From NCBI RefSeq assembly GCF_021869535.1, contig NW_026262712.1, positions 116,250,001 to 116,314,000 on the forward strand: a stretch of 64,000 nt of DNA. The letters run 5' to 3'. This DNA comes from Mytilus californianus (Eukaryota). Shown piece by piece: positions 33,917-50,710 of the stretch. The translations under genes were made by a program, and so were the position numbers. The notes under the pieces were generated by a model that saw only the letters and a program-made list of their open reading frames with translations, had not been told where the DNA came from and made no database searches. The first letter of the stretch is position 1, and each line of letters opens with the position of its first letter.

Positions 33917-35115
33917 TATATACATCTCTTATATATACATGTATATATAGAAACACTCGTTTTTCTAATTCATTTTTTCTTGAGTATATTATTCTGTGCA
34001 TGAGAACATTTTTTTTCATTTATTTATACATTATATAAACAAAAGGAATAAATGTTGAACTTTATACTATTTACTAACACAATTTTTTGTTCTGATGTAT
34101 TAACCCTTTGACTGCCAATATATTGGAAAACGCTTTACCTTTGACTGCCAAGAATCGGCCCGGCGTCGTACGTTTTCAAACAGCGCCATGGCAACCTTTA
34201 CAACAATTGATAACGTCACGCTATTGTGCATGGTACCTGCATAGGATTGCTCGTTTTGATGACACCACACAGCTGTCTGCTTTGTTGATTTATCGCTCTC
34301 AAATTTATATATTTAGGCTGTAGGTTGATAAAATAATATAAAAAAATGTACTGTACTAAAAGGTGAAATATATGGGTCAAATGAAATACCTTTCTAATGA
34401 GTCATAAAAACAGAGTAGGTGTGTTCGAATAACAAAATTTTACTAAAAGTACTTGACGACAAACTTTTCTGTTGGGTCTTGAAAATGAATAACTTCAAAA
34501 AAATTTCAGTTTTTGTGTGTGTTATCTACGGTAATCATTCTTCAACCTCTGAATATTTTTAGTCTGCCCTTCCACGAAATACTCAATTAGAATTTTTTTA
34601 AATATTTTTGAACTTTCGAAAATTCCCCCTGACAACCGATCAGACAATATTTTTTTTAAAGTTGAACAAATGCATAAAAGTACATTAAATGATGCTCAAA
34701 AGCTAGTAGATACATTTGTCTTTTAAAATACAACTGGCGTATAAGGATCGTACTGATACTATGTGGATAAATTTATCGGTTTTCAAGGGCTAAATTGACA
34801 GCGCGTCATCACTACAATGGCTTCCATTTATACGATTATAAAAATTAGGTGGCGTAATGGGGAGATAATTATGACGAAGTAGAATCCTGACTGAAAGGAC
34901 ATTAAAACAAAAATGTTTTTTCGTGGTGAAATTATAAATATTAAAACATATCTGCCGCCGAAATATAATGCGAATTGTGAAAGAAGGTACATTTTTAATT
35001 TGTGTAAATGTTTAAAATCTCTCGTAAATGTGTACCACATACTGAGGCACTTTGGACAATAAAAGACACCAGACAAATGTAATTATATAATACAATATTA
35101 ACAATGTATTTCTGA

Positions 35116-36412
35116 TTAACATTCGTGCCTCTGAAGGCAAGCTGCATGTAGTCCTCTGGTACAGTGCACACAAGAGGTTCTTGATCTTTTTCTTATATTT
35201 CGCTTTCTGTCGGAACAAACGACACAATCTCGTTCTTTTCGACCGTCAAGTTTTTTCACTCTTGCTTGCCGATTCACGTTACCATGTCTGTGTGTCAAAT
35301 GAGCGGACGCTAAACTTTCTATTACAGATTGGTTGAACTGAAGTCGGGACATAACCGGTAATGAGGTGTTATGACTGTATAGAATATACGCGTTTAACAT
35401 AATGCGGTGAAATATGTGATATATAATTTTTTTCCATACTTTACTGCATTTCCTGTGATCATTATATGCGCCAATCAATTGGTCGCTAAGGTCGACACCG
35501 CCCATAAATGTATTATACGCGCCTATGATCCTAGGTTTACCGTTTAGTGTATCAATAGCATTGTAGTAAGTAGACACCAATGTGACGGGTTTTTTTCTGT
35601 TGTGGTCGCGGAAACGGCAAAGCATGATTTGTCTTTGTCTAGCGTAAACAGCATTCCCTGCCTGCGGACGTGCATTTTTTATCATCTGTGGCATAGGTCT
35701 ATTAGTTCTCATTGTGCCTGTGAGATACGTACGCTCTCTCAATAATTTGTTAGCTAAATTAAGTGAAGCAAAAAAGCTATCGGCGAAAACATGAAAGCCT
35801 TTCCCAAGAAGATGCGAATTCTTCATTAAATTTATTACTACATTTGTTCCTTGTAATGTTCCAGCAGGAGTGGGATCGAAACGTTTCCCGTGATATACAT
35901 CCATCTGTAAAACATACCCGGTGACGGACTCGACCAACATCCAGAATTTAACGCCAAACCTTGAACGTTTACTTGGTATATACTGTAACATACTTGTCTT
36001 TCCTTTTGTACCAACAAGGGATTCATCTACAGCAAGTTCTCTGCGGGGATTATAATACCGTAAAAATTTCCTGTTAACGAAATCAAGTAACGGTTTGAAC
36101 CTTTGAGATGGTTTGTAAGCTGGATCATTACGCTTAGGGAGTTTTTTGGTGTCCACTAGGTGCAAAAATTTTAAGATGTTTTGGAATCGGTTTCGACTGA
36201 ACATACAACGGAACCAGGGTGTAGACTGAGATGGACTGTGCTTATTCCAATATTCTTCAAATGATACTTTCCTAATTAAGCCCATGTTATAAAAAACGGC
36301 AAGGAATCCCTTAAACTCAGGTATGGTCAGTTTACCCTCCTTCTGCCACTGCATTTTTCTCGAAAATCGACTGGTTTGGCGAATGGTTTCATTACAAAGA
36401 TTCTTTGCATAT
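35116..36412 (-). CDS. piggyBac transposase, exon 2 (DDD core plus C-terminal cysteine-rich domain)
   Basis: Uninterrupted frame with VDESL, KYIP-like QYIPSKRSRFGVKFW, FADSFF, GTMRTNR, YNTFMGGVDLSDQ and CVVC...CVHC..GLHAACLQRH. tttttttgtag acceptor. Confidence 0.9.
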
Positions 36413-37110
36413 CTACAAAAAAAATCAAAAATAATCATATACATTTATTATATAAAGTCGTAGAATCTTTTATGTAAATATCTATTTTTTTAAGGGAACG
36501 ACCATATTACTTTGAAAATGTATATTTTTTGGTGGTGGTGATTAAGTGGGGTTATTTTTATTTTCTTCATTTGTTTTTGGATTTGGTGATTTGTTGATGT
36601 CTTCGTGCCAGTAACTTATATCCGTTCTTTTTAATGTTTTGTTTTCGTATACTGCCCGAATAACCGTTTCTTTTGAGTTACACGTGCTTTTGTGATATTT
36701 TATATCCTGTCATTGGGGCGCTTCCCCTGTATCTGAGCAAGCTGCAACGCAACCACAGAAAAACATAATGTTCATTACTCTTTATTGAGCTGAACGAACA
36801 AACAGTCGTGTTAGGCTGTCTTTCTATTATCTTGACCGGTCTACACATACCATTTCAGCAGGTGGATATAAAAGTGAAAAAGTGTTCAAAAAATTTCTAA
36901 ATTATGTTTTAGAAAGAACAATGTCATAAAATGAAACAACTTGTAATCACAAAGACTTAAATTGTATGACTTTGTTGATTATTTTATTGACTGTGTCATT
37001 AACATATCAACGGCGCGTTGGTTCTATATTGATGGTAAAAAATTGCAATATGGCTATGAAAGATACGTCTAGTAACTATAAACTAACTCAGAAAAGATTA
37101 TTTTACCAAC

Positions 37111-37295
37111 CTGTTTGTTTGTTTGACAAACTCTTTGATAAGGTCAATAGAAAACAGCAAATAAAAGTAAGCTATTGGCGCGGCATCTCTGGGCGGCATA
37201 TTAATGGGTCCAGTGGGTGCTCTATTAAACGGTGGGTCATTCATTGGCTCTGGTGGGAGAACACGGAACCATGGATTAGGTTCAATTGCAGCCAT
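37111..37295 (-). CDS. piggyBac transposase, exon 1 (MAAIEPNPW...YFYLLFS..LIKEFVKQTN-R)
   Basis: AG|gttggt donor at 37110. Splicing to 36412 gives TNR-YAK, the conserved PGBD TNxYA motif. Joined CDS is 1482 nt (493 aa). Confidence 0.8.
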
Positions 37296-37546
37296 GTTTT
37301 CTTCAGCGCTGCTCAAGGTCTATGACGTCAAGATTACGTCATTGATGCTGCACATCGGCCAAAGCAGTCAAAGGTACATTTTTAAAATCGGCGCGTTTTT
37401 TTGTTGTTGTGTGTATGAGGGATACCCCCTTTTGGCACGTGATATTCCAGGTACATGAAAAAAAGAGTATTCTGTACTCAAAGGAATGGTACACAGTATT
37501 CAGAAATTAACGTGTTGGTACTCGATACGCCGGAATCATAATTGTT

Positions 37547-37648
37547 TCTGTTTATGCCCCCACCCACCGGAGGCGGCATTAAGTGACTCTTAAGTGTTAA
37601 CTTTGACCACCCGTCCGTCCGACCTGGTTTTGGTTTCCGCGCTTAAAA
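37547..37648 (+). mobile_element. 5' module resembling a pearl/HINE element inserted in the piggyBac
   Basis: tttatgccccaccc..ggaggcggca short hairpin, ccgtccgtccg microsatellite seed, tggtttccgcgct. Confidence 0.45.
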
Positions 37649-38790
37649 CCGAAGTAAAAAGTCGAAGACGATTATGAAAAGTTTATAGAGGGATAAATGC
37701 AATAAAAAAATATAACTTAAAAAATAATTCCTTCATGTCATGCTCTATGCTCATTTTAACATGGGTAGTCATTATATTTGTCTATATTTTACACTGAGTG
37801 TTATGTCGATTCTAATAGGGCAAATACAGTATTTTTATAGGTCGAAGCGCACGAAAATACCTTAAAAATGTTTGGCTGTTCTCGTTTCCTCCCAATGGAG
37901 TCTGTACATTACATTTTCATATTTAATTACTTTAAAAACTAAAAGCAGGGTAAATATGTGTTGTTTGATAAACAATACATAATAAAAGTTTATGTAAGCT
38001 GCTAAAATATATATACTTTATTAGAATAACAATGAAAATAACGAAAATATAAACAGTAAATTTGTGCCCAGGTGTCAAACATATTTTGTGCTAATTAGAA
38101 CACGGCTTTGTTTCCAAGGCGTAACAAGGACGTCATATTAGAATGATAAATGATTTATGCTTTTTAAGTCCCTCATTGGTCCATATGCACGTCAACAAAA
38201 TAAAAAAAAATTTGGTTTTATTCCTATATCATAAAATTGAGAAAAGAAATGGGGAATATGGCAAAGAGACAACAACCCGACCAAAGAGCAGATAACAGCC
38301 GAAGGCACCCGGAGTATGATAAAGACGCATTTATACAATGAAGATATTGGAGCTGGGACGACTTTTAAACATATCCGTTTATTTGGAAAAATCAATCAAA
38401 AGAAATATGTGAATGTAATCAAATGACAATGCACTTCTGGGTAATAATGTAATAATAAGGATGGCTGGATCATGATGGGGCTTCATCGAAAGAAAAGTCA
38501 ATGAGCCCGGTAGCAGAACTCTGAACAACGGCTGATTTTCTTTCCACGCCGGCTTCGCTGGGCGCTGCAAATTCTCTATGACGTCAAGGAACAACGTCAC
38601 AGCGGAAAACAACATCGGCTTTGGGCCGATCCTTGGCAGTCAAAGGTACTGTTTCTGCATCGGCCAAATCGGCCCTATGGCAGAAAGGAGGTTAAACGCA
38701 ATGTACAAAAAGCTGCAAAACTATATTTAAAAGAGGTACGAAAAGTTGCAAAATTTTCCAAACAGCATCCGATTTTACCTTAATGGATGC

Positions 38791-38823
38791 ACGCGCCTGA
38801 TGAAGCTAATTTGTTTAGCGAAA
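38791..38823 (+). ncRNA. Hammerhead core with perfect stem II (GCTAA-tttgt-TTAGC), 3' side disrupted
   Basis: acgcgc CTGATGA AGCTAA tttgt TTAGC GAAA then taaaa instead of TATTgcg. Confidence 0.65.
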
Positions 38824-38947
38824 TAAAATATAACAACTATTTTTATAACACTCATTAGCGTGATAAAGTTACATTCTTAGGCATTTATATACATATATAT
38901 TTATATATATAGAATTTAGAAGGGAAAAGGGGAATGTTTAAATAAAG

Positions 38948-39650
38948 TGTTACGGGATTGCTTCCCTTAGTACATGTAGTAGCTACTTCGGTAGACGTAA
39001 GCTAGGGAAATACTTCTTTAGCTCAGCCGGTTAGATGCGTTGCCTTGTAACACAGAGGTGACGAGTTCGAGTCCCGCAGGAGACAACGTGATTTTGTAAG
39101 ACGAATCCAGCTCTCCGGTTATAATTGGAGCTCAACTTAAAAACCCACGGCGGTAAGAGAGGATTTCTAGCCAGGGTATGTGTTGTTTGAGTCATAATGG
39201 TATGATCACTCTTGAGGTGGGTTCGTGTCACGGAGGAGAAACAGTTGTGTTATGGGGGTCATAATGGTATGATGAATCTTGAGGAGGGGAAGTGTGACGA
39301 GATAGCTTCCTTTGGTACATGTAGTAGATACTGAGCCAGCCGTAAGCGGTTGAGCTAGGGAAGTACTTCTTGAGCTCAGTCGATTAGAACACTGCCTTGT
39401 TACACAGAGGTCCCGGCCGAGTCCCGATGGAGACAAAGGTGTGTTATGAGAGTCATAATGGTATGATGACTCTTAAGGAGGGGGTTATGTGACATGTAGT
39501 AGATATTTAGCCAGTTGTAAGCGGTTGAGCTAGGGAAGTTCTTCTTTAGCCCAGTCGGTTAGAGCGCTGCCTTGTAACACAGGGATCCCGCGTTCGAGTC
39601 CCGGAAGAAACAAAGTGATTTTGTAAGACGAATCATGCTCTCCGATTACA
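38948..39650 (+). mobile_element. Tandem array of miniature LTR units each carrying a tRNA-like sequence (Helenus/TRIM-like)
   Basis: LTR-like starts TGTTACG (38948), TGTCACG (39226, truncated), TGTGACG (39293), TGTGACA (39488), the last three directly after purine tracts. Ends TTATA/TTACA (about 39122, 39650); TGG after the first LTR; A and B boxes inside each full unit. Confidence 0.65.
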
Positions 39651-39656
39651 ATATGT

Positions 39657-39683
39657 ATGTGTGTGTGTGTGTGTGTGTGTGTG
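39657..39683. repeat. (TG)n microsatellite
   Basis: Direct reading. Confidence 0.95.
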
Positions 39684-39824
39684 AACCGTGATGGTATTCC
39701 GAACCACGACGGTCACTCTGAAGTGCGATGGTTTGACGCTGAAGTGAGATGGTGTCATTGTGACTTTATCCTGTTGATAGCTACGCCGAAATGCTTTTGT
39801 GGTAACGCTGAAGTGCGATGGGAT

Positions 39825-39960
39825 GCCTGTACCAAGTCAAGAATATGACAGTTGTTGTCCATTCGTTTGATGTGTTTGTGCTTTTGATTTTGCCATTTGA
39901 TTAGGGACTGTCCGTTTTGAATTTTCCTCGGAGTTCAGTATTTTTGTGATTTAACTTTTT
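39825..39960 (-). repeat. Interspersed repeat (same family as 15775-15915)
   Basis: Reverse-complement match. Confidence 0.75.
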
Positions 39961-42249
39961 TCATAAACTATATTTCTAATGTTTTTCATGTTCACATTTC
40001 GATTTAGCATTTAAAAGTCAATTTGTTTATTAGAAGCATTTTTTCTGGTTTTTAAGTAAATAATAGTGATCATCGAGAGTATAACTCGTTTACCCTAGTG
40101 TTCTACTTCAAATTAGATATAGTCATGCTCCCGATAAAATAAAAATGGACAGACAGACGTACATGTACGGATTCTTTCAAAGTTTGCCGGCGCTAACCCA
40201 GGCTGTATATGCATGGTGAATTTTGACAATTGTGTACCGGTAAAACGGAATCGAACCGATTACTTATAATGCAAGTCTTTGCCTGTCTGCTATTTAGCAT
40301 TCATGTGAACAATCCTTTAATTACTAAAAGAACGACTTTGTCTATGAACTACGGAGGCCCATTTAAAACCTTGCAAAACCTACGTTGAATTCGAAAAAAT
40401 CGTAAACATGGATTAAAATCATTATCAATAATTGTATAGTCCTTTATCACGAATTTAACATGGATTAAATTCGTGAAAACAATTTTGCAGAATTAGTTTT
40501 TACTTGTTTCTTTAATTCGTGATTTTCTGTTCTTTAATTGGGGAAATATCCTATTTCAGGACCTACCTATTGTGTTAATTGTTTGTTGATTTATTTCTCG
40601 TCCTGAACATGAAATATTTGCCACTGTACGTAAAAAAAACATCAATTAATCTATCAAATTCACTTTTTACGGGAGTGTTTTTTTTTAAATAGCTAGGTAA
40701 TACTTTGTAGTAGAAAGCAAAATGCTGCAAGGTTGTAGATTGCCTTATATCTGTAGGATTATAGTATAGCTTACATACCGAACGGGAAGTGCTGTCTTTT
40801 CCATTTATTCATTTAATTTTTTATACTCAGAAGGGAGAGTAGACACAAGTTCATATGCCATGTTTACGAATTCTGTGAACTAGATTTTCATTTACCTCCT
40901 GCACATGTGTCGGAATATTGGGTTGTCGGACTAATTGGGTTTCGGACCAATGGGGTGACGACTTGTCGACATAGCGGAGCGAATCCGCATACACAGTATT
41001 TAAACAGGTATGATTTGAGCAGTTTCCACAGAATATAAGAAACACTATTGTGTCATTTGGAAAGAAAGGGGAGATAACTAATAGCATCACAGCTACTTAC
41101 CACTTTCTAAGCAACAAATATTTAACTTCCTAACATATTTCCGGGATAAGAATACCGAGTGAGTAAATAACAATACGTGTTGTAAAGAAAGTTTTGAGGT
41201 CAAAAAGAATTATCCTGTCCACACGACTGTAAGTTCAAATTGTAAAATTCAGTAGTATCAACATAATATAAAAATTCAGACTAAATTTGTCCTGGGGCCG
41301 AGTGTTTTGCTGGGGAGGCGGCATTGTATTGTTTGTAGTTTCGCAAATACAGCGGTTGGTTGAATTTCCGTCAAATGAGTACTCACTCTTATGTCCAGTT
41401 TAAGAGTATTGTTATCATGGTTATACTGTATAATATAAGACTATATTCAGAAGCAGCTATAAAGTCTGTCATGTGTTTCCAAGAGAAAATATTTTCCTGA
41501 AATTAATTCCCCCTTTACAAATAAGGATCAATTCAATATTTGTGCATTCTTCTCCAACTATTATAATACTACCCATCCAGAAATATGTATTGCCTTACTG
41601 TAAATCCTTCAAAAGAACTACTTTAAAATATTTTGCTTTGTTGATAATATTTAAAAGTTTTGTTTCCTGGTTAAGGGTAATGGGATAAAGGTAAATTTCC
41701 GGGTTAAGGGCCATTCATGGATAAGTGAATGACAGATGTTGAAAATTCACCAATTCTAATGTATAATTGCCTCTAATCATAGTTATGTTTTTTCTCATAA
41801 AATTTGACACTTTTCTTTCAATCACTTTGTGTCGCATTTGAACAGTGTCAACTGCTGACTGTCAAAAAAATATGTATTACCCAATCAATTATCAAACATA
41901 GAAAACCATTTTACTCGTTACTGCCAGAGGAGAACACAAAACATTTATCAAAAGTGAAATTGAAAAACAATCTTTACTATAAAGGTAGCAATACACAGTT
42001 AGGAGACCATTGCGGTTTCGCATTTGGACATTGGTAATTTTTTCAAATATTAAATTATTCTGTAATTGAATTTATATGTCGACAGCTGAAGAATAATACA
42101 GCCTTCAAATTGGTTTTATAAGAACATAAACCTTTTTTTGTGTATATTTTCCATACTGGTCATAGGTCCAGAAATTAGTGTAATGTTTACAAGCATTGCT
42201 TTTTCTTTACACGAACGAAAAGTAGTTGATTTTTTAAAAAGGCATAAAC

Positions 42250-43604: not shown

Positions 43605-44172
43605 ACACCCGGCCACCGAAAGCTTTATTATTGTGAAGCCTAGGTGGTCGTGTGGTCTAGCGCGTCGGATACAGTGCAGGCGATTTAGTGTCACGATATC
43701 TCAGTAGCATGAGTTCGAATCCCGGCGAGGGAAGAACAAAAAATTTGCGACTACATATTTACATATCTATTATTGTTGGGCTGATGTTTAGACGAGTTGT
43801 ATATACAGAATGTACACAGCCATGTATCACCATCACTGCTGGTGATCCGATGGATAAATCTGCTGTAGAGTTGTCACTGGTTCAGACGTACTTATAAATA
43901 TAATCATTTCTGTGACTGTATCTTGCATTAATTTGTAGGATCCTTTACAATAGATATTTCAGCTGATCTGTACCAATTCCATCTTCATGCCTTATATATC
44001 ATGTACTGTATTACGACGCTAGATTAAAACTAACCAGGAAAGGTAACACCCGGACACCGAAAGCTTTATTTTTAATGCCTAGGTGGTCGAGTGGTCGGGC
44101 ACAGTGTAAGGCGATTTGGTGCCACGATATCTCAGAAGAATGAGTTCGAATCCCGGCCAGGGAAGAACAAAA
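43605..44172 (+). mobile_element. Tandem 439-bp unit: tRNA-derived head, body, hammerhead-like motif, next tRNA head
   Basis: A box TGGTCG(T/A)GTGG at 43645 and 44084; B box GAGTTCGAATCC at 43711 and 44142. Hammerhead-like CTAACCA gg...cc GAAAGCTT at 44030-44066 and a half motif at 43605-43627. Confidence 0.75.
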
Positions 44173-44174
44173 AT

Positions 44175-46950
44175 AAACACTAAAAAGTGTTGAATATCAT
44201 CGCACAAAGATGGAAAACTGAACAGATGATATAAATTATACAATAATTGCAAATATTTCGGCTCAACAAATGGCCTTCCTCAGTGTTAAAAGTTTTAACA
44301 ATACTGATATATAATGTATAAGGTGTAAACATAGATCAGTAATAATACAGGTAAGTTTTGGTCGATTGATTTTAATCCAAAATCCTGAATATCATAATAT
44401 AAACATTAGACTGTAAATTTAATTATTTCTTTCTATTGATTCAATCTGGATGGAGGACACCCAGTGTTTTTATCCAAAACTTCTCCCGATTTTCTCTTTG
44501 CCTATTTTGCCATGTACAATCCTGTTCGATCACAAGGATCTTCATGTGATCAAAATCTTTCAGATTGTGATCTGGTAACCTGAAGTGTTGGCTGACAGGA
44601 ATATACGTTTTTTTTTGTGAGGTCACTCCTGTGGCCATTAAGGCGTTTGTGAAATGGCTGCATAGATTCACCAACATATTGGAGACCACATATAGGACAC
44701 TCAAGAACGTAAATCACGTTTGAGCTTTTGCAGTTGACATTGCAGAAGATCTTGTATGTCTTTTCTGTGGTCTTACTGTGAAATGTTGATGAATGCTGCA
44801 ATTGGTTGCAACATTTGCGCTTATCCCCACAAGGCTGGCAATTACCTACAGTATGGTTAGGTTTGGAAAGGTCAGCACGGACAAGTATATTTCTCAGGCT
44901 GTTAGGTTGTTTGAAGGCAATCATGGGAGGCTCAGGAAAGATTTTGGATAACTTAGAATGTTTCTCGATTGCTGTCCACTGATCACGAATGGTCTTGAAA
45001 CTATTTCTCAGGCATGGCTGGTAGGTGAGCACACATGGGATTCTTTTACTTTTCTGTTTTTCTTTGTAAGTTAGCAGACTGCTTCTGGGGATTGATTCCG
45101 CTTTTCGAAAACAATTTTTGCTGTGTTTGTGTTTATATCCCCTTCTTTTCAAATGTCCTTTGAGCTGCCCCAGACGTTGTTTTGCAGTGTCTTCAGAGGA
45201 GCAGATTCGCCTTATTCTGAGAGCTTGGCTGTATGGAATGCTCTTCGTGCAGTGTGGAGGATGGCAATTTTCAGGCGACAAGTATTAATGAGTATCTGTA
45301 GGTTTAGAGTATATCTGTGTTTATTATACCTACAGAGAGGGTGCTAGATGTATCAAGGAAGTTTATGGTGGAATTAGATGTTTCATGGGTGAATTTGATG
45401 GTAGGGTGTTGATTGTTAGCATTTGTTATAAAAGTTTGTAATTCTTGGTCTCTCTTGTCCCATTTTATGTCAACGTGATCAATGAATCGATACCAGGAAA
45501 GCGGTTTTTCGATGGAGCACTCCAGCAGTTGCTTTTCAACTTTACCCATCCGCATGGGGAATATTCGTATAGAGGGAGGTGACATCCATTGTGACAAGAG
45601 TAGTATTGGCAGGTAGAGGGTTTAAATCCTGCATTTTTAGTAGGTAATCTGTAGAATCTTTTATAAAAGATGGCAAGTTTTCTACATGTGGTCGAAGATA
45701 GTAATCAATGAATTCGGATATTTTTTCGGTGGGATGACCATTAGCTGAGACGATTGGTCTTCCTGGGTTACCAGGTTTATGAATTTTAGGGAGCAGGTAG
45801 AATCGCCCAGGTTTAGAATCTTCAGGTTTTAAATATTTGAGAGTATCTATATCAATGATGTTATTGTCACACATTTCCTTTAAACATTCTGTTATTTTCT
45901 CACTGAATTGGAGGGTGGGGTCCGAATTAAGTTTTTTTTAAAACCGGTCATCATCTAATTGGCGAATGGCCTCTTGGACATAGTTAGATTTGTCCATGAC
46001 GACAACTGCACTCCCTTTGTCTGCAGGTTTAATAACAATGTCGTCATTATCTCTCAAATTTGTTAAAGCCACACGTTCACCAGGTGTTAAATTGTCATAG
46101 GTCTGATTATTTATTTTTACATTTGTAAGTATATCCGTTTTAACATTGTCTATAAATGATTCTAAGGTGGTATTTTTGCTTGGTTTAGGGACCCAGTTAC
46201 TTTTCTTTCTAAATCTATATTCGTTGGAGTCGTCAGAGTCACTATCTGAGGTGGTGCTATCGTCCTCTTTCGATGCAAAATGTTCCTTGATGCGGAGGCT
46301 CCTGGAAAATTATCCAGTTCATCAGACAATTTAGTATCATTCACTGGACCTGGGACTGGACAAAAGTTTAGGCCTCTGGATAGTAATGAAGTTTCGTCCT
46401 CAGTAAGTTGTTTGCTGGAGAGATTGACAACGGTATTGATCTTGTTGCTGAGGACTTGAGGTCTACGTCTGAAATGTCTGTTTTTGGTTTTATCATTATT
46501 TTTTTCTTTTGTACTAGTGGATGGGAAAGAAGTACCATCCCGTTGAAATTTGCATCTTTGTCTGGAGCGGAGAGTGGCGGTCTTAGTGTTGGTTAAATCT
46601 CTCAAGCGCTCTTGGATGTTCTCGAATTCGCTTGCTGTTAGATCTTTTTTGCAAGCGTGAGACAAGGAGTCAAATTGAAGTGTTAAGTTTTTAAGATGTT
46701 CAATACAGTGTCCTCTAAGGAGTATGAGAAGACGGAGGGAACAGTGAAATAGGGTCTGATCCCACCTACGTAGAAATGTATCAGACAGGTTGCCGGTAGT
46801 TTGAGGCAGTGCTTTAATACATAAGCCACTGGGAATAACATTATTGTCAATATAATGACAGTAATTAGAAAGATGATGTCTAGTACTAATTTGTTGTTGT
46901 TTAGTGATCCTTAGTTGTTTGAAATATTGATCATAATTCATTTTGTACAC
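44175..46950 (-). mobile_element. Neptune-clade Penelope-like element, left arm (carries the N-terminus; disrupted)
   Basis: ORF fragments 46162-46950, 45542-45874, 45304-45597, 44550-45281, 44441-44704 are collinear with the right arm. 188-bp deletion at ATGG microhomology, several frameshifts, TAC>TAA stop near 45945. Confidence 0.95.
44251..44283 (-). ncRNA. pLTR hammerhead-like motif of the Neptune left arm
   Basis: Mirror of 49724-49756. Confidence 0.6.
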
Positions 46951-46958
46951 AGTTGGAA

Positions 46959-49879
46959 TATATTGACAATAATGTTATTCCCAGTGGCTTATGTATTAAA
47001 GCACTGCCTCAAACTACCGGCAACCTGTCTGATACATTTCTACGTAGGTGGGATCAGACCCTATTTCACTGTTCCCTCCGTCTTCTCATACTCCTTAGAG
47101 GACACTGTATTGAACATCTTAAAAACTTAACACTTCAATTTGACTCCTTGTCTCACGCTTGCAAAAAAGATCTAACAGCAAGCGAATTCGAGAACATCCA
47201 AGAGCGCTTGAGAGATTTAACCAACACTAAGACCGCCACTCTCCGCTCCAGACAAAGATGCAAATTTCAACGGGATGGTACTTCTTTCCCATCCACTAGT
47301 ACAAAAGAAAAAAATAATAATAAAACCAAAAACAGACATTTCAGACGTAGACCTCAAGTCCTCAGCAACAAGATCAATACCGTTGTCAATCTCTCCAGCA
47401 AACAACTTACTGAGGACGAAACTTCATTACTATCCAGAGGCCTAAACTTTTGTCCAGTCCCAGGTCCAGTGAATGATACTAAATTGTCTGATGAACTGGA
47501 TAATTTTGCCAGGAGCCTCCGCATCAAGGAACATTTTGCATCGAAAGAGGACGATAGCACCACCTCAGATAGTGACTCTGACGACTCCAACGAATATAGA
47601 TTTAGAAAGAAAAGTAACTGGGTCCCTAAACCAAGCAAAAATACCACCTTAGAATCATTTATAGACAATGTTAAAACGGATATACTTACAAATGTAAAAA
47701 TAAATAATCAGACCTATGACAATTTAACACCTGGTGAACGTGTGGCTTTAACAAATTTGAGAGATAATGACGACATTGTTATTAAACCTGCAGACAAAGG
47801 GAGTGCAGTTGTCGTCATGGACAAATCTAACTATGCCCAAGAGGCCATTCGCCAATTATATGATGACCCGTTTTACAAAAAACTTAATTCAGACCCCACC
47901 CTCCAATTCAGTGAGGAAATAACAGAATGTTTAAAGGAAATGTGTGACAATAACATCATTGATATAGATACTCTCAAATATTTAAAACCTGAAGATTCTA
48001 AACCTGGGCGATTCTACCTGCTCCCTAAAATTCATAAACCTGGTAACCCAGGAAGACCAATCGTCTCAGCTAATGGTCATCCCACCGAAAAAATATCCGA
48101 AGTCGTTGATTACTATCTTCGACCACATGTAGAAAACTTGCCATCTTTTATAAAAGATTCTACAGATTATCTACAAAAAATGCAGGATTTAAACCCTCTA
48201 CCTGCCAATACTACTCTTGTCACAATGGATGTCACCTCCCTCTATACGAATATTCCCCATGCGGATGGCATTGAAGCATCTAGAGAAGTTTGGGACTCTC
48301 GATCTCTTAAAATTCCACCTACTGAATGCTTAGTAGAAATGCTTACTATGGTCTTGAAAAAGAACAACTTCACATTCCAAGGAGAACACTATTTACAGAC
48401 AAATGGCACTGCTATGGGTACTAAAATGGCTCCATCTTATGCCAATATATTCATGGGTAAAGTTGAAAAGCAACTGCTGGAGTGCTCCATCAAAAAACCG
48501 CTTTCCTGGTATCGATTCATTGATGTCGTTGACATGAAATGGGACAAGGGAGACCAAGAATTACAAACTTTTATAACAAATGCTAACAATCAACACCCTA
48601 CCATCAAATTCACCCATGAAACATCTAATTCCACCATAAACTTCCTTGATACATCTAGCACCCTCTCTGTAGGTATAATAAACACAGATATATACTCTAA
48701 ACCTACAGATACTCATCAATACTTGTCGCCTGAAAGTTGCCATCCTCCACACTGCACGAAGAGCATTCCATACAGCCAAGCTCTCAGAATAAGGCGAATC
48801 TGCTCCTCTGAAGACACTGCAAAACAACGTCTGGGGCAGCTCAAAGGACATTTGAAAAGAAGGGGATATAAACACAAAAACATAAAAAATAATTTTCGAA
48901 AAGTGGAATCCATCCCCAGAAGCAGTCTGCTAACTTACAAAGAAAAACAGAAAAGTAAAAGAATCCCATGTGTGCTCACCTACCATCCATGCCTGAGAAA
49001 TAGTTTCAAGACCATTCGTGATCATTGGACAGCAATCGAGAAACATTCTTAAGTTATCCAAAATCTTTCCTGAGCCTCCCATGATTGCCTTCAAACAACC
49101 TAACAGCCTGAGAAATATACTTGTCCGTGCTGACCTTTTCAAACCTAACCATACTGTAGGTAATTGCCAGCCTTGTGGGGATAAGCGCTGCAAATGTTGC
49201 AACCAATTGCAGCATTCATCAACATTTCACAGTAAGACCACAAAAAAGCAATACAAGATCTTCTGCAATGTCAACTGCAAAAGCTCAAACGTGATTTACG
49301 TTCTTGAGTGTCCTATATGTGGTCTCCAATATGTTGGTGAATCTATACAGCCATTTCACAAACGCCTTAATGGCCACAGGAGTGACCTCACAAAAAAACC
49401 GTATATTCCTGTCAGCCAACACTTCAGGTTACCAGATCACAATCTGAAAGATTTTGATCACATGAAGATCCTTGTGATCGAACAGGATTGTACATGGCAA
49501 AATAGGCAAAGAGAAAATCGGGAGAAGTTTTGGATAAAAACACTGGGTGTCCTCCATCCAGATTGAATCAATAGAAAGAAATAATTAGATTTACAGTCTA
49601 ATGTTTATATTATGATATTCAGGATTTTGGATTCAAATCAATCGACCAAAACTTACCTGTATTATTACTGATCTATGTTTACACCTTATACATTATATAT
49701 CAGTATTGTTAAAACTTTTAACACTGAGGAAGGCCATTTGTTGAGCCGAAATATTTGCAATTATTGTATAATTTATATCATCTGTTCAGTTTTTCCATCT
49801 TTGTGCGATGATATTCAACACTTTTTAGTGTTTTGTTTTCCATCTATTTATCGGTATTGTTACACAATCTTTTAGACTC
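46959..49879 (+). mobile_element. Neptune-clade Penelope-like element, right arm (RT plus GIY-YIG, one frameshift, lacks first 29 codons)
   Basis: [56 protein letters not shown]....SIPYSQALRIRRIC, CQPCGDKRCKCC, NVIYVLEC..CGLQYVGES, REKFWI. 1-nt insertion near 49050; ends next to (AT)10 at 49880-49899. Confidence 0.95.
49724..49756 (+). ncRNA. pLTR hammerhead-like motif of the Neptune right arm
   Basis: CTGAGGA AGGC catttgttga GCC GAAA TATT with palindromic AAATATTT stem III; stem I pairing is weak. Confidence 0.6.
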
Positions 49880-50039
49880 ATATATATATATATATATATT
49901 GTCATAGACTCTGGTATTGAGATGACTGCGGTAGTCAAATTCGGGGTAAATGTAAAAAAAATGATGATTATGAAGCTCTATATGTGGTGTCTGTGATCTC
50001 TTGTTCATGACTATTTATGGGACCCAATCAGAAAAGTTT

Positions 50040-50290
50040 GTATTGTTAATGGAAAGATCATATTCAATATACCTGTATGTAAATTTAAAATATTCTGTGA
50101 CTGCATCTTACATTAATTTATAGGATCCTTTACAATAGATAATTCAGCTGATCTGTAACAATTCCATCTTCATGCCTTATATATCATGTACTGTGTTACG
50201 ACGCTAGATTGAAACTGACGAGGAAAGGTAACACCCTGCCATCGAAAGCTTTATTTTTAGAGCCTAGGTGGTCGAGTGGTCTATTCGTCT
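50040..50290 (+). mobile_element. Further copy of the tRNA/hammerhead unit with an intact core (50204-50260)
   Basis: ctagattgaaa CTGACGA GG aaa GGT aac ACC ctgcca TC GAAA GC TT tatttttag, then gcctaggTGGTCGAGTGG. Confidence 0.7.
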
Positions 50291-50312
50291 AAATTCGTCT
50301 AAATAACAAAAC

Positions 50313-50710
50313 CGAATCGGGATTCGAACTCATGCTACTGAGATATCGTGGCACCAAATCGTCTTGCACTGTGCCCGACGCGCTAGACCACTAGTATAAT
50401 TTACAGTTGTCACTACATATAGGCAGACATATATTTCTTGGTAGAGGGGTCTAAATACAGCACAAACAACATTTTCTAAAAGACCAAAAAAGTGAAAAAG
50501 TATATTTTAACAATCATTTGACTAGCAGGTCGAACAACGGATGTTCTTAAACCCTGCTGACTGCCATTGGCGATTGCCAAATAAACGGTTCATCAGAACC
50601 GGGTGTTACCTTTCCTCGTCAGTTTTAATTTAGCGTCGTAACACAGTACATCATACATGTATATAAGGCATGAAGATGGAATTGTTAAGGTCAGCTGAAT
50701 TATCTATTGT
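50313..50710 (-). mobile_element. Inverted fragments of the same tRNA/hammerhead unit (tRNA head 50313-50393; body plus 5' half hammerhead 50590-50710)
   Basis: Reverse complement of 43650-43722 and of 43950-44052; CTGACGA intact on the minus strand at 50615-50621. Confidence 0.7.

What the first reader, a model, noticed from the sequence alone, without database searches (positions are those of the whole stretch)
38948..39650. Tandem mini-LTR retroelement whose LTRs contain a tRNA-like Pol III cassette
Seen: units of about 160-175 bp start TGT(T/G)AC and end TTACA/TTATA. Each holds ttctt-TAGC(T/C)CAG.CGG-ttagag..ctgcc-TTGTAA-cacag..GTTCGAGTCC..aagaa (A box, B box, TTCTT/AAGAA acceptor-like stem). 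A short linker has TGG after the LTR and a purine tract (gaggaggggaag, aaggaggggg) before the next TGT. Established: TRIMs carrying small-RNA-derived promoters in their LTRs exist (Cassandra with 5S; Helenus with tRNA). Inference: a Helenus-like family arranged as a shared-LTR tandem with deletions from unequal recombination; it would be mis-annotated as tRNA pseudogenes or SINEs.
Basis: partly seen in the sequence, partly recalled or inferred. Interest (0 to 1): 0.7.

Follow-up and report, generated by a model that had tools for sequence, protein, structure and literature searches.

The report
Decayed tandem copy of mussel Helenus TRIM
This is an old, rearranged tandem copy of Helenus-1, a miniature LTR retrotransposon of mussels whose repeats carry a tRNA-like RNA polymerase III promoter; the class and this mussel family were published in 2024, so it is real but ordinary.

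Summary
Window 38948-39650 contains four LTR-derived and three internal-domain pieces of one TRIM family.

Family-wide evidence from the host genome (1.65 Gb):
- Copies have sharp TGTGAC...GGTTACA ends and occur as solo LTRs, canonical LTR-internal-LTR elements (about 454-473 bp) and shared-LTR trimers.
- 38 of 56 copies with intact ends carry perfect 4-bp target-site duplications. A shifted control gave 0 of 40.
- The internal domain starts with an 11-nt primer-binding site complementary to the 3' end of the host tRNA-Lys(CTT). It ends in a purine tract directly before the next LTR.
- Each LTR holds a tRNA-like module with A and B boxes. It is not a true tRNA: ARAGORN finds almost none, and Rfam scores are 25-38 bits against a threshold of 29.

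LTR and internal sequences match the published consensuses Helenus-1_MyCo and Helenus-1_MyGa (Kojima 2024, PMC10886601), so the family is already known. Shared-LTR tandem TRIMs are also known.

The window copy is dead: the primer-binding site is mutated, two LTRs are truncated, there is a locus-specific 194-bp duplication, and no duplication flanks the array.

New here: some copies have identical LTRs, and one insertion is absent from other individuals, so mobility was recent. RNA data gave no verdict on Pol III transcription.

The scan had already found this family elsewhere in this genome (s1-302503, s1-312311).

The parts
38948..39123 (+). LTR a. Near full length (176 bp, with an 8-bp deletion). 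Starts TGTTAC and ends GGTTATA, a mutated TTACA.
   Evidence: Aligns to positions 1-181 of a natural reference LTR. Boundaries were defined from 14 solo copies.
39013..39085 (+). tRNA-like module of LTR a. A box 39019-39030, B box 39064-39074 (AGTTCGAGTCC). A TTTT run lies just downstream of this span, at 39092-39095.
   Evidence: Read directly from the sequence. Homologous to the Rfam tRNA match in LTR d.
39124..39225 (+). Internal domain a, complete. Decayed PBS TGGAGCTCAAC at 39126-39136 (9 of 11 positions match the family PBS TGGCGCCCAAC). Hairpin at 39189-39211. Decayed purine tract at 39214-39221.
   Evidence: Aligned with 36 genomic internal domains. The PBS is complementary to host tRNA-Lys(CTT). 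Matches the published Helenus-1_MyCo-I.
39226..39244 (+). LTR b remnant: LTR positions 1-8 joined to about 136-147.
   Evidence: Repeats D2 and D5; mapping to the L058 element.
39245..39292 (+). Internal-domain 3' part only: hairpin plus PPT gaggaggggaag (39281-39292).
   Evidence: INT 56-98.
39293..39438 (+). LTR c: positions 1-147 only. A box mutated (GAGCTCAG), B box broken, 3' end missing.
39439..39487 (+). Internal-domain 3' part only: hairpin plus PPT aaggaggggg (39475-39484). Joined directly to LTR c at the same illegitimate junction seen at 39244/39245.
   Evidence: (D5, 194-bp spacing). The junction is unique to this locus.
39488..39650 (+). LTR d: TGTGAC, then a deletion of about 18 bp, then the rest through to GATTACA.
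39540..39612 (+). tRNA-like module of LTR d. A box 39547-39558, B box 39591-39601. A TTTT run lies just downstream of this span, at 39619-39622.
   Evidence: Rfam tRNA 25.6 bits, below the gathering score of 29. ARAGORN finds nothing. No cloverleaf in the minimum-energy fold, z = -0.35.

Best explanation
Window 38948-39650 is a dead, rearranged shared-LTR tandem copy of Helenus-1. Helenus-1 is a non-autonomous miniature LTR retrotransposon (TRIM) of mytilid mussels.

Family structure:
- The LTR is about 183 bp, TGTGAC...GGTTACA, with a tRNA-Thr-like module carrying Pol III A and B boxes at about positions 66-148 and a TTTT run about 10 nt further on.

Shown here: integration is of the integrase type (TG...CA ends, 4-bp TSDs), and the family was recently mobile.

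Inferred:
- Reverse transcriptase and integrase are supplied in trans by an autonomous Gypsy-type element, as Kojima 2024 proposed.
- The genomic RNA is made by Pol III from the tRNA-like module, reading through the TTTT of the 5' LTR and ending at that of the 3' LTR. R would then be about positions 66-150.

The window array most likely arose from one or more insertions by unequal LTR-LTR exchange. A 194-bp local duplication carrying an LTR147-to-internal junction followed, then deletions and 13-19% point divergence.
For: - Boundaries and solo copies.
- Architectures L, L-I-L and L-I-L-I-L.
- TSDs: 25 of 40 perfect plus 9 with 3 of 4 matching, against 0 of 40 in the shifted control; 13 of 16 perfect in a second sample.
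- An empty-site allele skips exactly 468 bp (464-bp element plus 4-bp TSD) at the L058 copy. It appears in two contig sets and in 3 RNA reads.
- LTR pairs within one element reach 100% identity (L079, L094). The median is 0.90-0.95, against 0.87 between elements.
- The host tRNA-Lys(CTT) gene ends GTTGGGCG (plus CCA), the exact complement of the family PBS.
- tRNA-like but not tRNA.
- Word matches and a by-eye match to the published Helenus-1_MyCo and Helenus-1_MyGa LTR and internal consensuses.
- Definition of Helenus, the 4-bp TSD in animals, tRNA-Thr-like modules and tRNA-Lys PBS in bivalves.
Against: - The window array itself has no matching TSD (AAAG upstream, ATAT downstream). Its PBS is mutated and two of its LTRs are truncated, so its identity rests on homology to the family.
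- Pol III transcription is not shown. RNA-seq depth on the element was 0-3 reads, in a library unsuited to small Pol III RNAs.
- TTTT runs are not rarer in the element than chance predicts.
- The related published consensuses Helenus-3_MyGa and Helenus-1_LimFor have only TTT at that site.
- No autonomous partner was identified.
Confidence: 0.95

Rival explanations
1. A tRNA-derived SINE (SINE2) mobilised by a LINE, here in a head-to-tail cluster next to a (TG)n tail.
For: It has a tRNA-like head with A and B boxes. A (TG)15 run follows the last unit at 39654-39683.
Against: Fourteen solo copies end sharply at GGTTACA with no A-rich or simple-repeat tail. TSDs are a fixed 4 bp. The tRNA-like part starts about 65 bp inside the unit. 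A PBS and PPT lie between the units.
Confidence: 0.01
2. A non-autonomous DNA transposon (MITE, for example Ginger-like, with TGT...ACA ends and 4-bp TSD) that happens to contain a tRNA-like segment.
For: The unit's termini form a short imperfect inverted repeat (TGTGACGGGA versus TGTAACCGGA). TSDs are 4 bp and solo units are common.
Against: Whole L-I-L and L-I-L-I-L structures, not single units, are flanked by the TSD. The linker begins with an 11-nt complement of the tRNA-Lys 3' end and ends in a purine tract. LTR pairs within one element are up to 100% identical.
Confidence: 0.02
3. A satellite-like tandem repeat (period about 280 bp) unrelated to retrotransposition, with scattered monomers.
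For: Some loci carry arrays with a period of about 279 bp (L016, L078, and pairs of hits). The window copy is tandem.
Against: Most sampled loci are single L-I-L elements or solo LTRs at unrelated sites with TSDs. Arrays seen had at most 3-4 LTRs.
Confidence: 0.01
4. A cluster of real or recently decayed tRNA genes.
For: Nine LTRs in 20 loci just pass the Rfam tRNA threshold, at 30-38 bits.
Against: ARAGORN finds none in the window. It finds 4 in the 51 loci scanned, all labelled 'tRNA-???' with an abnormal anticodon call (4-nt tgta in three, 2-nt tg in one). Minimum-energy folds give no cloverleaf. True host tRNA genes look different.
Confidence: 0.01

Closest known systems
Helenus-1_MyCo (Mytilus coruscus) and Helenus-1/1B_MyGa (M. 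galloprovincialis), Kojima 2024, Biology 13:119 (PMC10886601), DataS1
   Same: LTR of 182-183 bp beginning tgtgacgggattgcttccc and ending ctctccggttaca. The same tRNA-like core (tagctcagtcggtta...ccttgtaacacag...gggttcgagtccc). The internal domain begins ttggcgcccaac and ends ...cataatggtatgatgactcttgaggtgggggaag. 4-bp TSD. Total length about 466 bp.
   Different: Nothing at family level. The window copy is a degenerate four-LTR tandem with deletions. Both the MyCo-type and the 1B_MyGa-type internal domains occur in this genome (L026 and L029 flanks).
Cassandra (plant TRIM with 5S rRNA in its LTRs; Kalendar 2008, 2020)
   Same: A TRIM with a Pol III gene-derived promoter and terminator inside the LTR. 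It forms LTR-I-LTR-I-LTR tandem arrays.
   Different: 5S-derived rather than tRNA-derived; found in plants; 5-bp TSD. Its Pol III transcripts have been shown experimentally, whereas here they are only inferred.
biv-TRIM (Satovic et al. 2019, PMC6934838)
   Same: A bivalve TRIM with solo repeats and TDRx_I(x-1) tandem arrays, also present in Mytilus.
   Different: biv-TRIM has no clear PBS and carries a conserved TGATCCCAAAGGAC block in its inner domain. That block is absent here. No tRNA-like module is reported in its repeats.
tRNA-derived SINEs (SINE2)
   Same: A tRNA-derived Pol III promoter head; short, abundant and non-coding. Kojima proposes that Helenus arose by insertion of a SINE2 into a TRIM LTR.
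   Different: No LINE-type tail, a fixed 4-bp TSD, and LTR/PBS/PPT architecture.

Membership tests
[quoted passage not shown] | Short non-coding element with two direct LTRs flanking a short internal domain | tested here: met
   The family has many L-I-L copies of 454-473 bp. The window copy is a rearranged derivative with four LTR-derived and three internal pieces.
[quoted passage not shown] | tRNA-like sequence with box A (TRGCY..YGG) and box B (GGTTC) inside the LTR | tested here: met
   Rfam tRNA scores of 25-38 bits in LTRs. The motifs are read directly in the sequence. LTR c in the window has a broken B box.
[quoted passage not shown] | PBS complementary to a tRNA directly downstream of the 5' LTR | tested here: met
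   The family PBS TGGCGCCCAAC is the complement of the 3' end (GTTGGGCG plus CCA) of host tRNA-Lys(CTT). The window copy matches at 9 of 11 positions.
[quoted passage not shown] | Polypurine tract directly upstream of the 3' LTR | tested here: met
   GAGGTGGGGGAAG lies directly before TGTGAC in 36 copies. In the window: 39281-39292 and 39475-39484.
[quoted passage not shown] | 4-bp TSD (animal Helenus) | tested here: met
   38 of 56 copies are perfect, against 0 of 40 in the control. The empty-site allele skips 464+4 bp. Not met for the window array itself (AAAG versus ATAT).
[quoted passage not shown] | Sequence homology to a published family consensus (Helenus-1_MyCo / Helenus-1_MyGa) | tested here: met
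   Three 11-13-mers from the window unit hit the published FASTA. The full consensuses were read and matched by eye.
[quoted passage not shown] | Transcription by RNA polymerase III from the tRNA-like module (the TRIMp3 proposal) | tested here: inconclusive
   Paired-end cDNA RNA-seq gave 0-3 reads over the element and no start or end pile-ups. No small-RNA data were available.
SINE2 (tRNA-derived SINE) | LINE-type 3' tail (poly-A or simple repeat) and variable-length TSDs | tested here: not met
   Sharp GGTTACA ends without tails and a fixed 4-bp TSD.
Cassandra | 5S rRNA-derived sequence in the LTR | tested here: not met
   An Rfam scan of 38000-40500 finds only a tRNA match and no 5S.
biv-TRIM | Conserved TGATCCCAAAGGAC block in the inner domain and no canonical PBS | tested here: not met
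   The block is absent from 39124-39292, and a canonical PBS is present.

The most novel reading that the evidence does not exclude
Helenus-1 may still be moving in this mussel, with a life cycle that uses cis-elements not yet described.

Evidence for current or very recent mobility: LTR pairs that are 100% identical, and an insertion absent from other individuals.

The undescribed cis-elements would be:
- an R region bounded by the Pol III start at the tRNA-like module and the TTTT run about 10 nt after it;
- a strong palindrome pairing box A with an upstream inverted copy;
- a stem-loop just before the PPT whose stem sequence differs between bivalve Helenus families while the structure is kept.

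That would make it a tractable animal model of a Pol III-driven LTR retroelement.
Probability: 0.3. Interest if true: 0.4.

Novelty: already known. Interest (0 to 1): 0.15.

Why it matters
There is little new here. The class (Helenus / TRIMp3) and this Mytilus family were published in 2024, and shared-LTR tandem TRIMs are known in bivalves, plants and zebrafish.

It has practical value for annotation. About a quarter of these LTRs pass the Rfam tRNA threshold, so hundreds to thousands of copies can be miscalled as tRNA genes, tRNA pseudogenes or SINEs in mussel genomes.

Two modest additions could guide an experimental test of whether Pol III really drives an LTR retroelement in an animal, a question Kojima 2024 left open:
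- direct signs of recent mobility;
- two structural motifs, the box-A palindrome and the pre-PPT hairpin, for which a term search of the paper's main text (hairpin, stem, palindrom, inverted repeat, packaging) found no mention.

Tried and rejected
- **tRNA genes.** ARAGORN found none in the window and only 4 odd calls in the 51 loci scanned. True tRNA genes are rejected.
- **Tandem Repeats Finder.** It did not see the array, because the units differ by indels. The repeat finder and blast mapping were needed.
- **Depletion of TTTT runs as a Pol III signature.** Observed 39 against 40 expected from shuffles, so no depletion. Only the position of the run is suggestive.
- **Is the LTR147-to-internal junction a propagating subfamily?** No. 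It is unique to this locus.
- **RNA evidence.** One paired-end cDNA RNA-seq run of raw reads gave 0-3 reads on a young copy and no start or end pile-ups. No verdict. Only one read-laying run was allowed, and I used it on L058 rather than on the window copy.
- **Search for the autonomous partner.** I listed the 68 genomic sites with the hairpin+PPT 35-mer and fetched the surroundings of 20 of them. All 20 were Helenus copies.
- **Consensus sequences.** I built none. Natural copies (L018 LTR, L058 element) served as references. The published consensuses were compared by short words and by eye only.

Full report
**1. The observation**

Reading 38500-40100 and running repeat finder confirm related units at 38948-39650. 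The 5' parts at 38945 and 39290 are 81% alike. The cores at 39317 and 39492 are 87% alike. The 3' parts at 39037 and 39564 are 84% alike. A 54-nt linker motif occurs three times (39179, 39246, 39440).

Rfam gives one sub-threshold tRNA match at 39540-39612 (25.6 bits, gathering score 29). ARAGORN finds nothing in the window. Tandem Repeats Finder misses the array. The window is AT-rich eukaryotic DNA (about 32% GC) from a 1.65-Gb assembly.

**2. What the unit is, from its other copies**

A search of the host genome with the last unit gave at least 760 first-look candidates. The linker gave 182. Both counts are lower bounds.

Fourteen solo copies aligned with their flanks show sharp ends, TGTGACGGGATTGC...CTCTCCGGTTACA. 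There is no A-rich or simple-repeat tail, and a 4-bp duplication of the target is visible.

I mapped a natural LTR (from L018) and the window linker onto 60 loci. This gave solo LTRs, many canonical LTR-internal-LTR elements of 454-473 bp, and shared-LTR trimers (L016, later L078).

- Of 40 copies with both ends intact, 25 had a perfect 4-bp TSD and 9 more had 3 of 4 matching. The next four bases outward matched perfectly in 0 of 40.
- A second sample of 20 loci gave 13 of 16 perfect. These loci were chosen from the 68 sites that match the hairpin+PPT 35-mer with at most one mismatch. They include the trimer L078, which is flanked by TATC on both sides.
- LTR identity within an element has a median of 0.90 in the first sample and 0.95 in the second, and reaches 1.00 (L079, L094). 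Identity between elements is 0.87.

**3. The internal domain**

Thirty-six genomic internal domains align well. Each starts, 1-2 nt after the LTR, with TGGCGCCCAAC. Each ends with a hairpin (GAGTCAT...ATGACTC) and then GAGGTGGGGGAAG directly before the next TGTGAC.

The host has a tandem array of at least 43 units on contig C110. Each unit holds a tRNA-Lys(CTT) gene and a tRNA-Arg(TCG) gene. The tRNA-Lys gene ends ...CACGTTGGGCG. With CCA added, this is the exact complement of the 11-nt PBS.

**4. The tRNA-like module**

It lies at LTR positions of about 66-148, with box A TAGCTCAGTCGG and box B GGTTCGAGTCC. A TTTT run follows about 10 nt after its end.

- ARAGORN calls only 4 modules in the 51 loci scanned. 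All are labelled 'tRNA-???' with an abnormal anticodon call: a 4-nt tgta in three and a 2-nt tg in one.
- Rfam scores 9 LTRs in 20 loci at 30-38 bits and the rest lower.
- Minimum-energy folds do not give a cloverleaf.

So it is a promoter-like relic, not a tRNA gene. The loop sequence CTTGTAA would read as a UGU (Thr) anticodon. This is an inference, and it agrees with Kojima's statement that bivalve Helenus modules are tRNA-Thr-like.

**5. Comparison with what is known**

Kojima 2024 (PMC10886601) defined Helenus as TRIMs with a tRNA-derived sequence in the LTR, plus a PBS and a PPT. Animal Helenus has 4-bp TSDs. Bivalve families occur in five pteriomorph orders, including Mytilidae, and use PBSs for tRNA-Lys among others.

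Short words from the window unit hit the paper's FASTA supplement. Reading that file shows the following:
- Helenus-1_MyCo (LTR 182 bp, internal 102 bp, total 466 bp) and Helenus-1/1B_MyGa are the same family as the window element, in both the LTR and the internal domain.
- The window's internal domain is of the MyCo type.
- The flanks of L026 and L029 show the 1B_MyGa type, so both types are present in this genome.

The host is therefore a Mytilus-like mussel.

Shared-LTR tandem arrays are already described for biv-TRIM in bivalves, for Cassandra, and for zebrafish Helenus LTR-11_DR. I found no later experimental work on Helenus. The scan had already met this family twice on other pieces of this genome, and an earlier follow-up reached the same verdict. 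I reached mine, before reading those notes.

**6. Anatomy of the window copy**

| Piece | Coordinates | Content |
|---|---|---|
| LTR a | 38948-39123 | Near full length |
| Internal a | 39124-39225 | Complete; PBS decayed to TGGAGCTCAAC |
| LTR b remnant | 39226-39244 | Positions 1-8 joined to about 136-147 |
| Internal 3' part | 39245-39292 | Hairpin plus PPT |
| LTR c | 39293-39438 | Positions 1-147 |
| Internal 3' part | 39439-39487 | Hairpin plus PPT |
| LTR d | 39488-39650 | About 18 bp deleted near the 5' end |

The junction 'LTR position about 147 to internal position about 233' occurs twice, 194 bp apart. It is found nowhere else in the genome. It is therefore a local duplication of a deleted unit, not a transposing variant.

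The three large LTRs differ from each other by 13-19%, so the array is old. The bases flanking the array (AAAG and ATAT) do not match. The (TG)15 run that follows is coincidental, because other copies lack such tails.

There is no other Helenus piece in the 64-kb window.

**7. How it works**

Shown here:
- integrase-type insertion (TG...CA ends, 4-bp TSD);
- a tRNA-Lys PBS and a PPT in the canonical places;
- recent mobility. Some copies have identical LTR pairs. At the L058 copy, an empty-site allele skips exactly 468 bp (464-bp element plus one TSD copy, with 4 bp of ambiguity at the joint). It appears in two contig sets of one organism label and in three RNA reads of another.

Inferred:
- mobilisation in trans by a Gypsy-type element, as Kojima proposed;
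- transcription by Pol III from the A and B boxes, with R running from the tRNA-like start to the TTTT run. This requires read-through in the 5' LTR, as in Cassandra.

The RNA run gave 0-3 reads over the element and no start or end pile-ups, so there is no verdict on transcription. TTTT runs are not depleted overall (39 observed, 40 expected). However, 32 of the 39 sit at the one conserved LTR site. That site has only TTT in two related published consensuses, so the terminator idea remains tentative.

**8. Side observations**

- A 26-nt near-palindrome pairs the box-A region with an upstream inverted copy (window 39343-39386). In the young copy L058 it folds at -25.8 kcal/mol, z = -3.75, and 0 of 200 shuffles fold as well.
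- By eye, every bivalve Helenus consensus I read in the published FASTA has a stem-loop of about 6-11 bp just before the PPT. The stem sequences differ between families.
- A search of the paper's main text for hairpin, stem, palindrom and inverted repeat found no mention of either feature.

**9. Limits**

Natural copies served as references.

**10. Verdict**

The element belongs to a published family, so novelty is 'already known' and interest is low.

Noticed in passing
L071-L076 (G000:C110:103.75-103.84 Mb): A tandem array of at least 43 units with a period of about 1135 bp. Each unit holds a tRNA-Lys(CTT) gene and, on the opposite strand, a tRNA-Arg(TCG) gene. This tRNA-Lys is the predicted primer of Helenus-1.
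   Followed up: partly
window 39343-39386; L058:1360-1420: A near-palindrome of about 26 nt in the LTR pairs the box-A / acceptor-D region of the tRNA-like module with an upstream inverted copy. In L058 it folds at -25.8 kcal/mol, z = -3.75. Similar palindromes with different centres (GTAC, GATC, TCGA) are visible by eye in other published mytilid Helenus LTRs. A term search of the paper's main text found no mention of it. Its function is unknown.
   Followed up: partly
window 39189-39211, 39256-39278, 39450-39472: A stem-loop sits just upstream of the PPT and is nearly invariant in 36 genomic copies. By eye, every bivalve Helenus consensus I read in the published FASTA has a stem of about 6-11 bp at this place, with a different sequence in each family. 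It may be a cis signal shared with the autonomous partner.
   Followed up: partly
L058:1317-1788 (G000:C35, about 14.578 Mb): This Helenus-1 copy (464 bp, TSD TTAT, LTRs 97.8% alike) is an insertion polymorphism. Contigs from two runs and three RNA reads join 1316 to 1785, skipping 468 bp.
   Followed up: yes
L089:113-833: A Helenus-1 copy whose internal domain is interrupted by about 620 bp of unrelated sequence, probably a nested insertion.
   Followed up: no
window 39654-39683 and 39711-39821: A (TG)15 microsatellite directly after the array. Further on, three copies of a 21-nt motif (GGTCACTCTGAAGTGCGATGG-like) of unknown nature.
   Followed up: no
L002 and L005 (G000:C1:74.726 and 74.766 Mb): The same solo LTR, with the same flanks and the same TSD (AATA), occurs twice about 39 kb apart in inverted orientation. 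This points to an inverted segmental duplication.
   Followed up: no
window 34104-38691 and 43605-50710: Other first-reader notes on this window describe a piggyBac element just upstream, and tRNA-promoter/hammerhead units around a Neptune palindrome downstream. The Helenus LTR and internal domain have no blast match there.
   Followed up: partly
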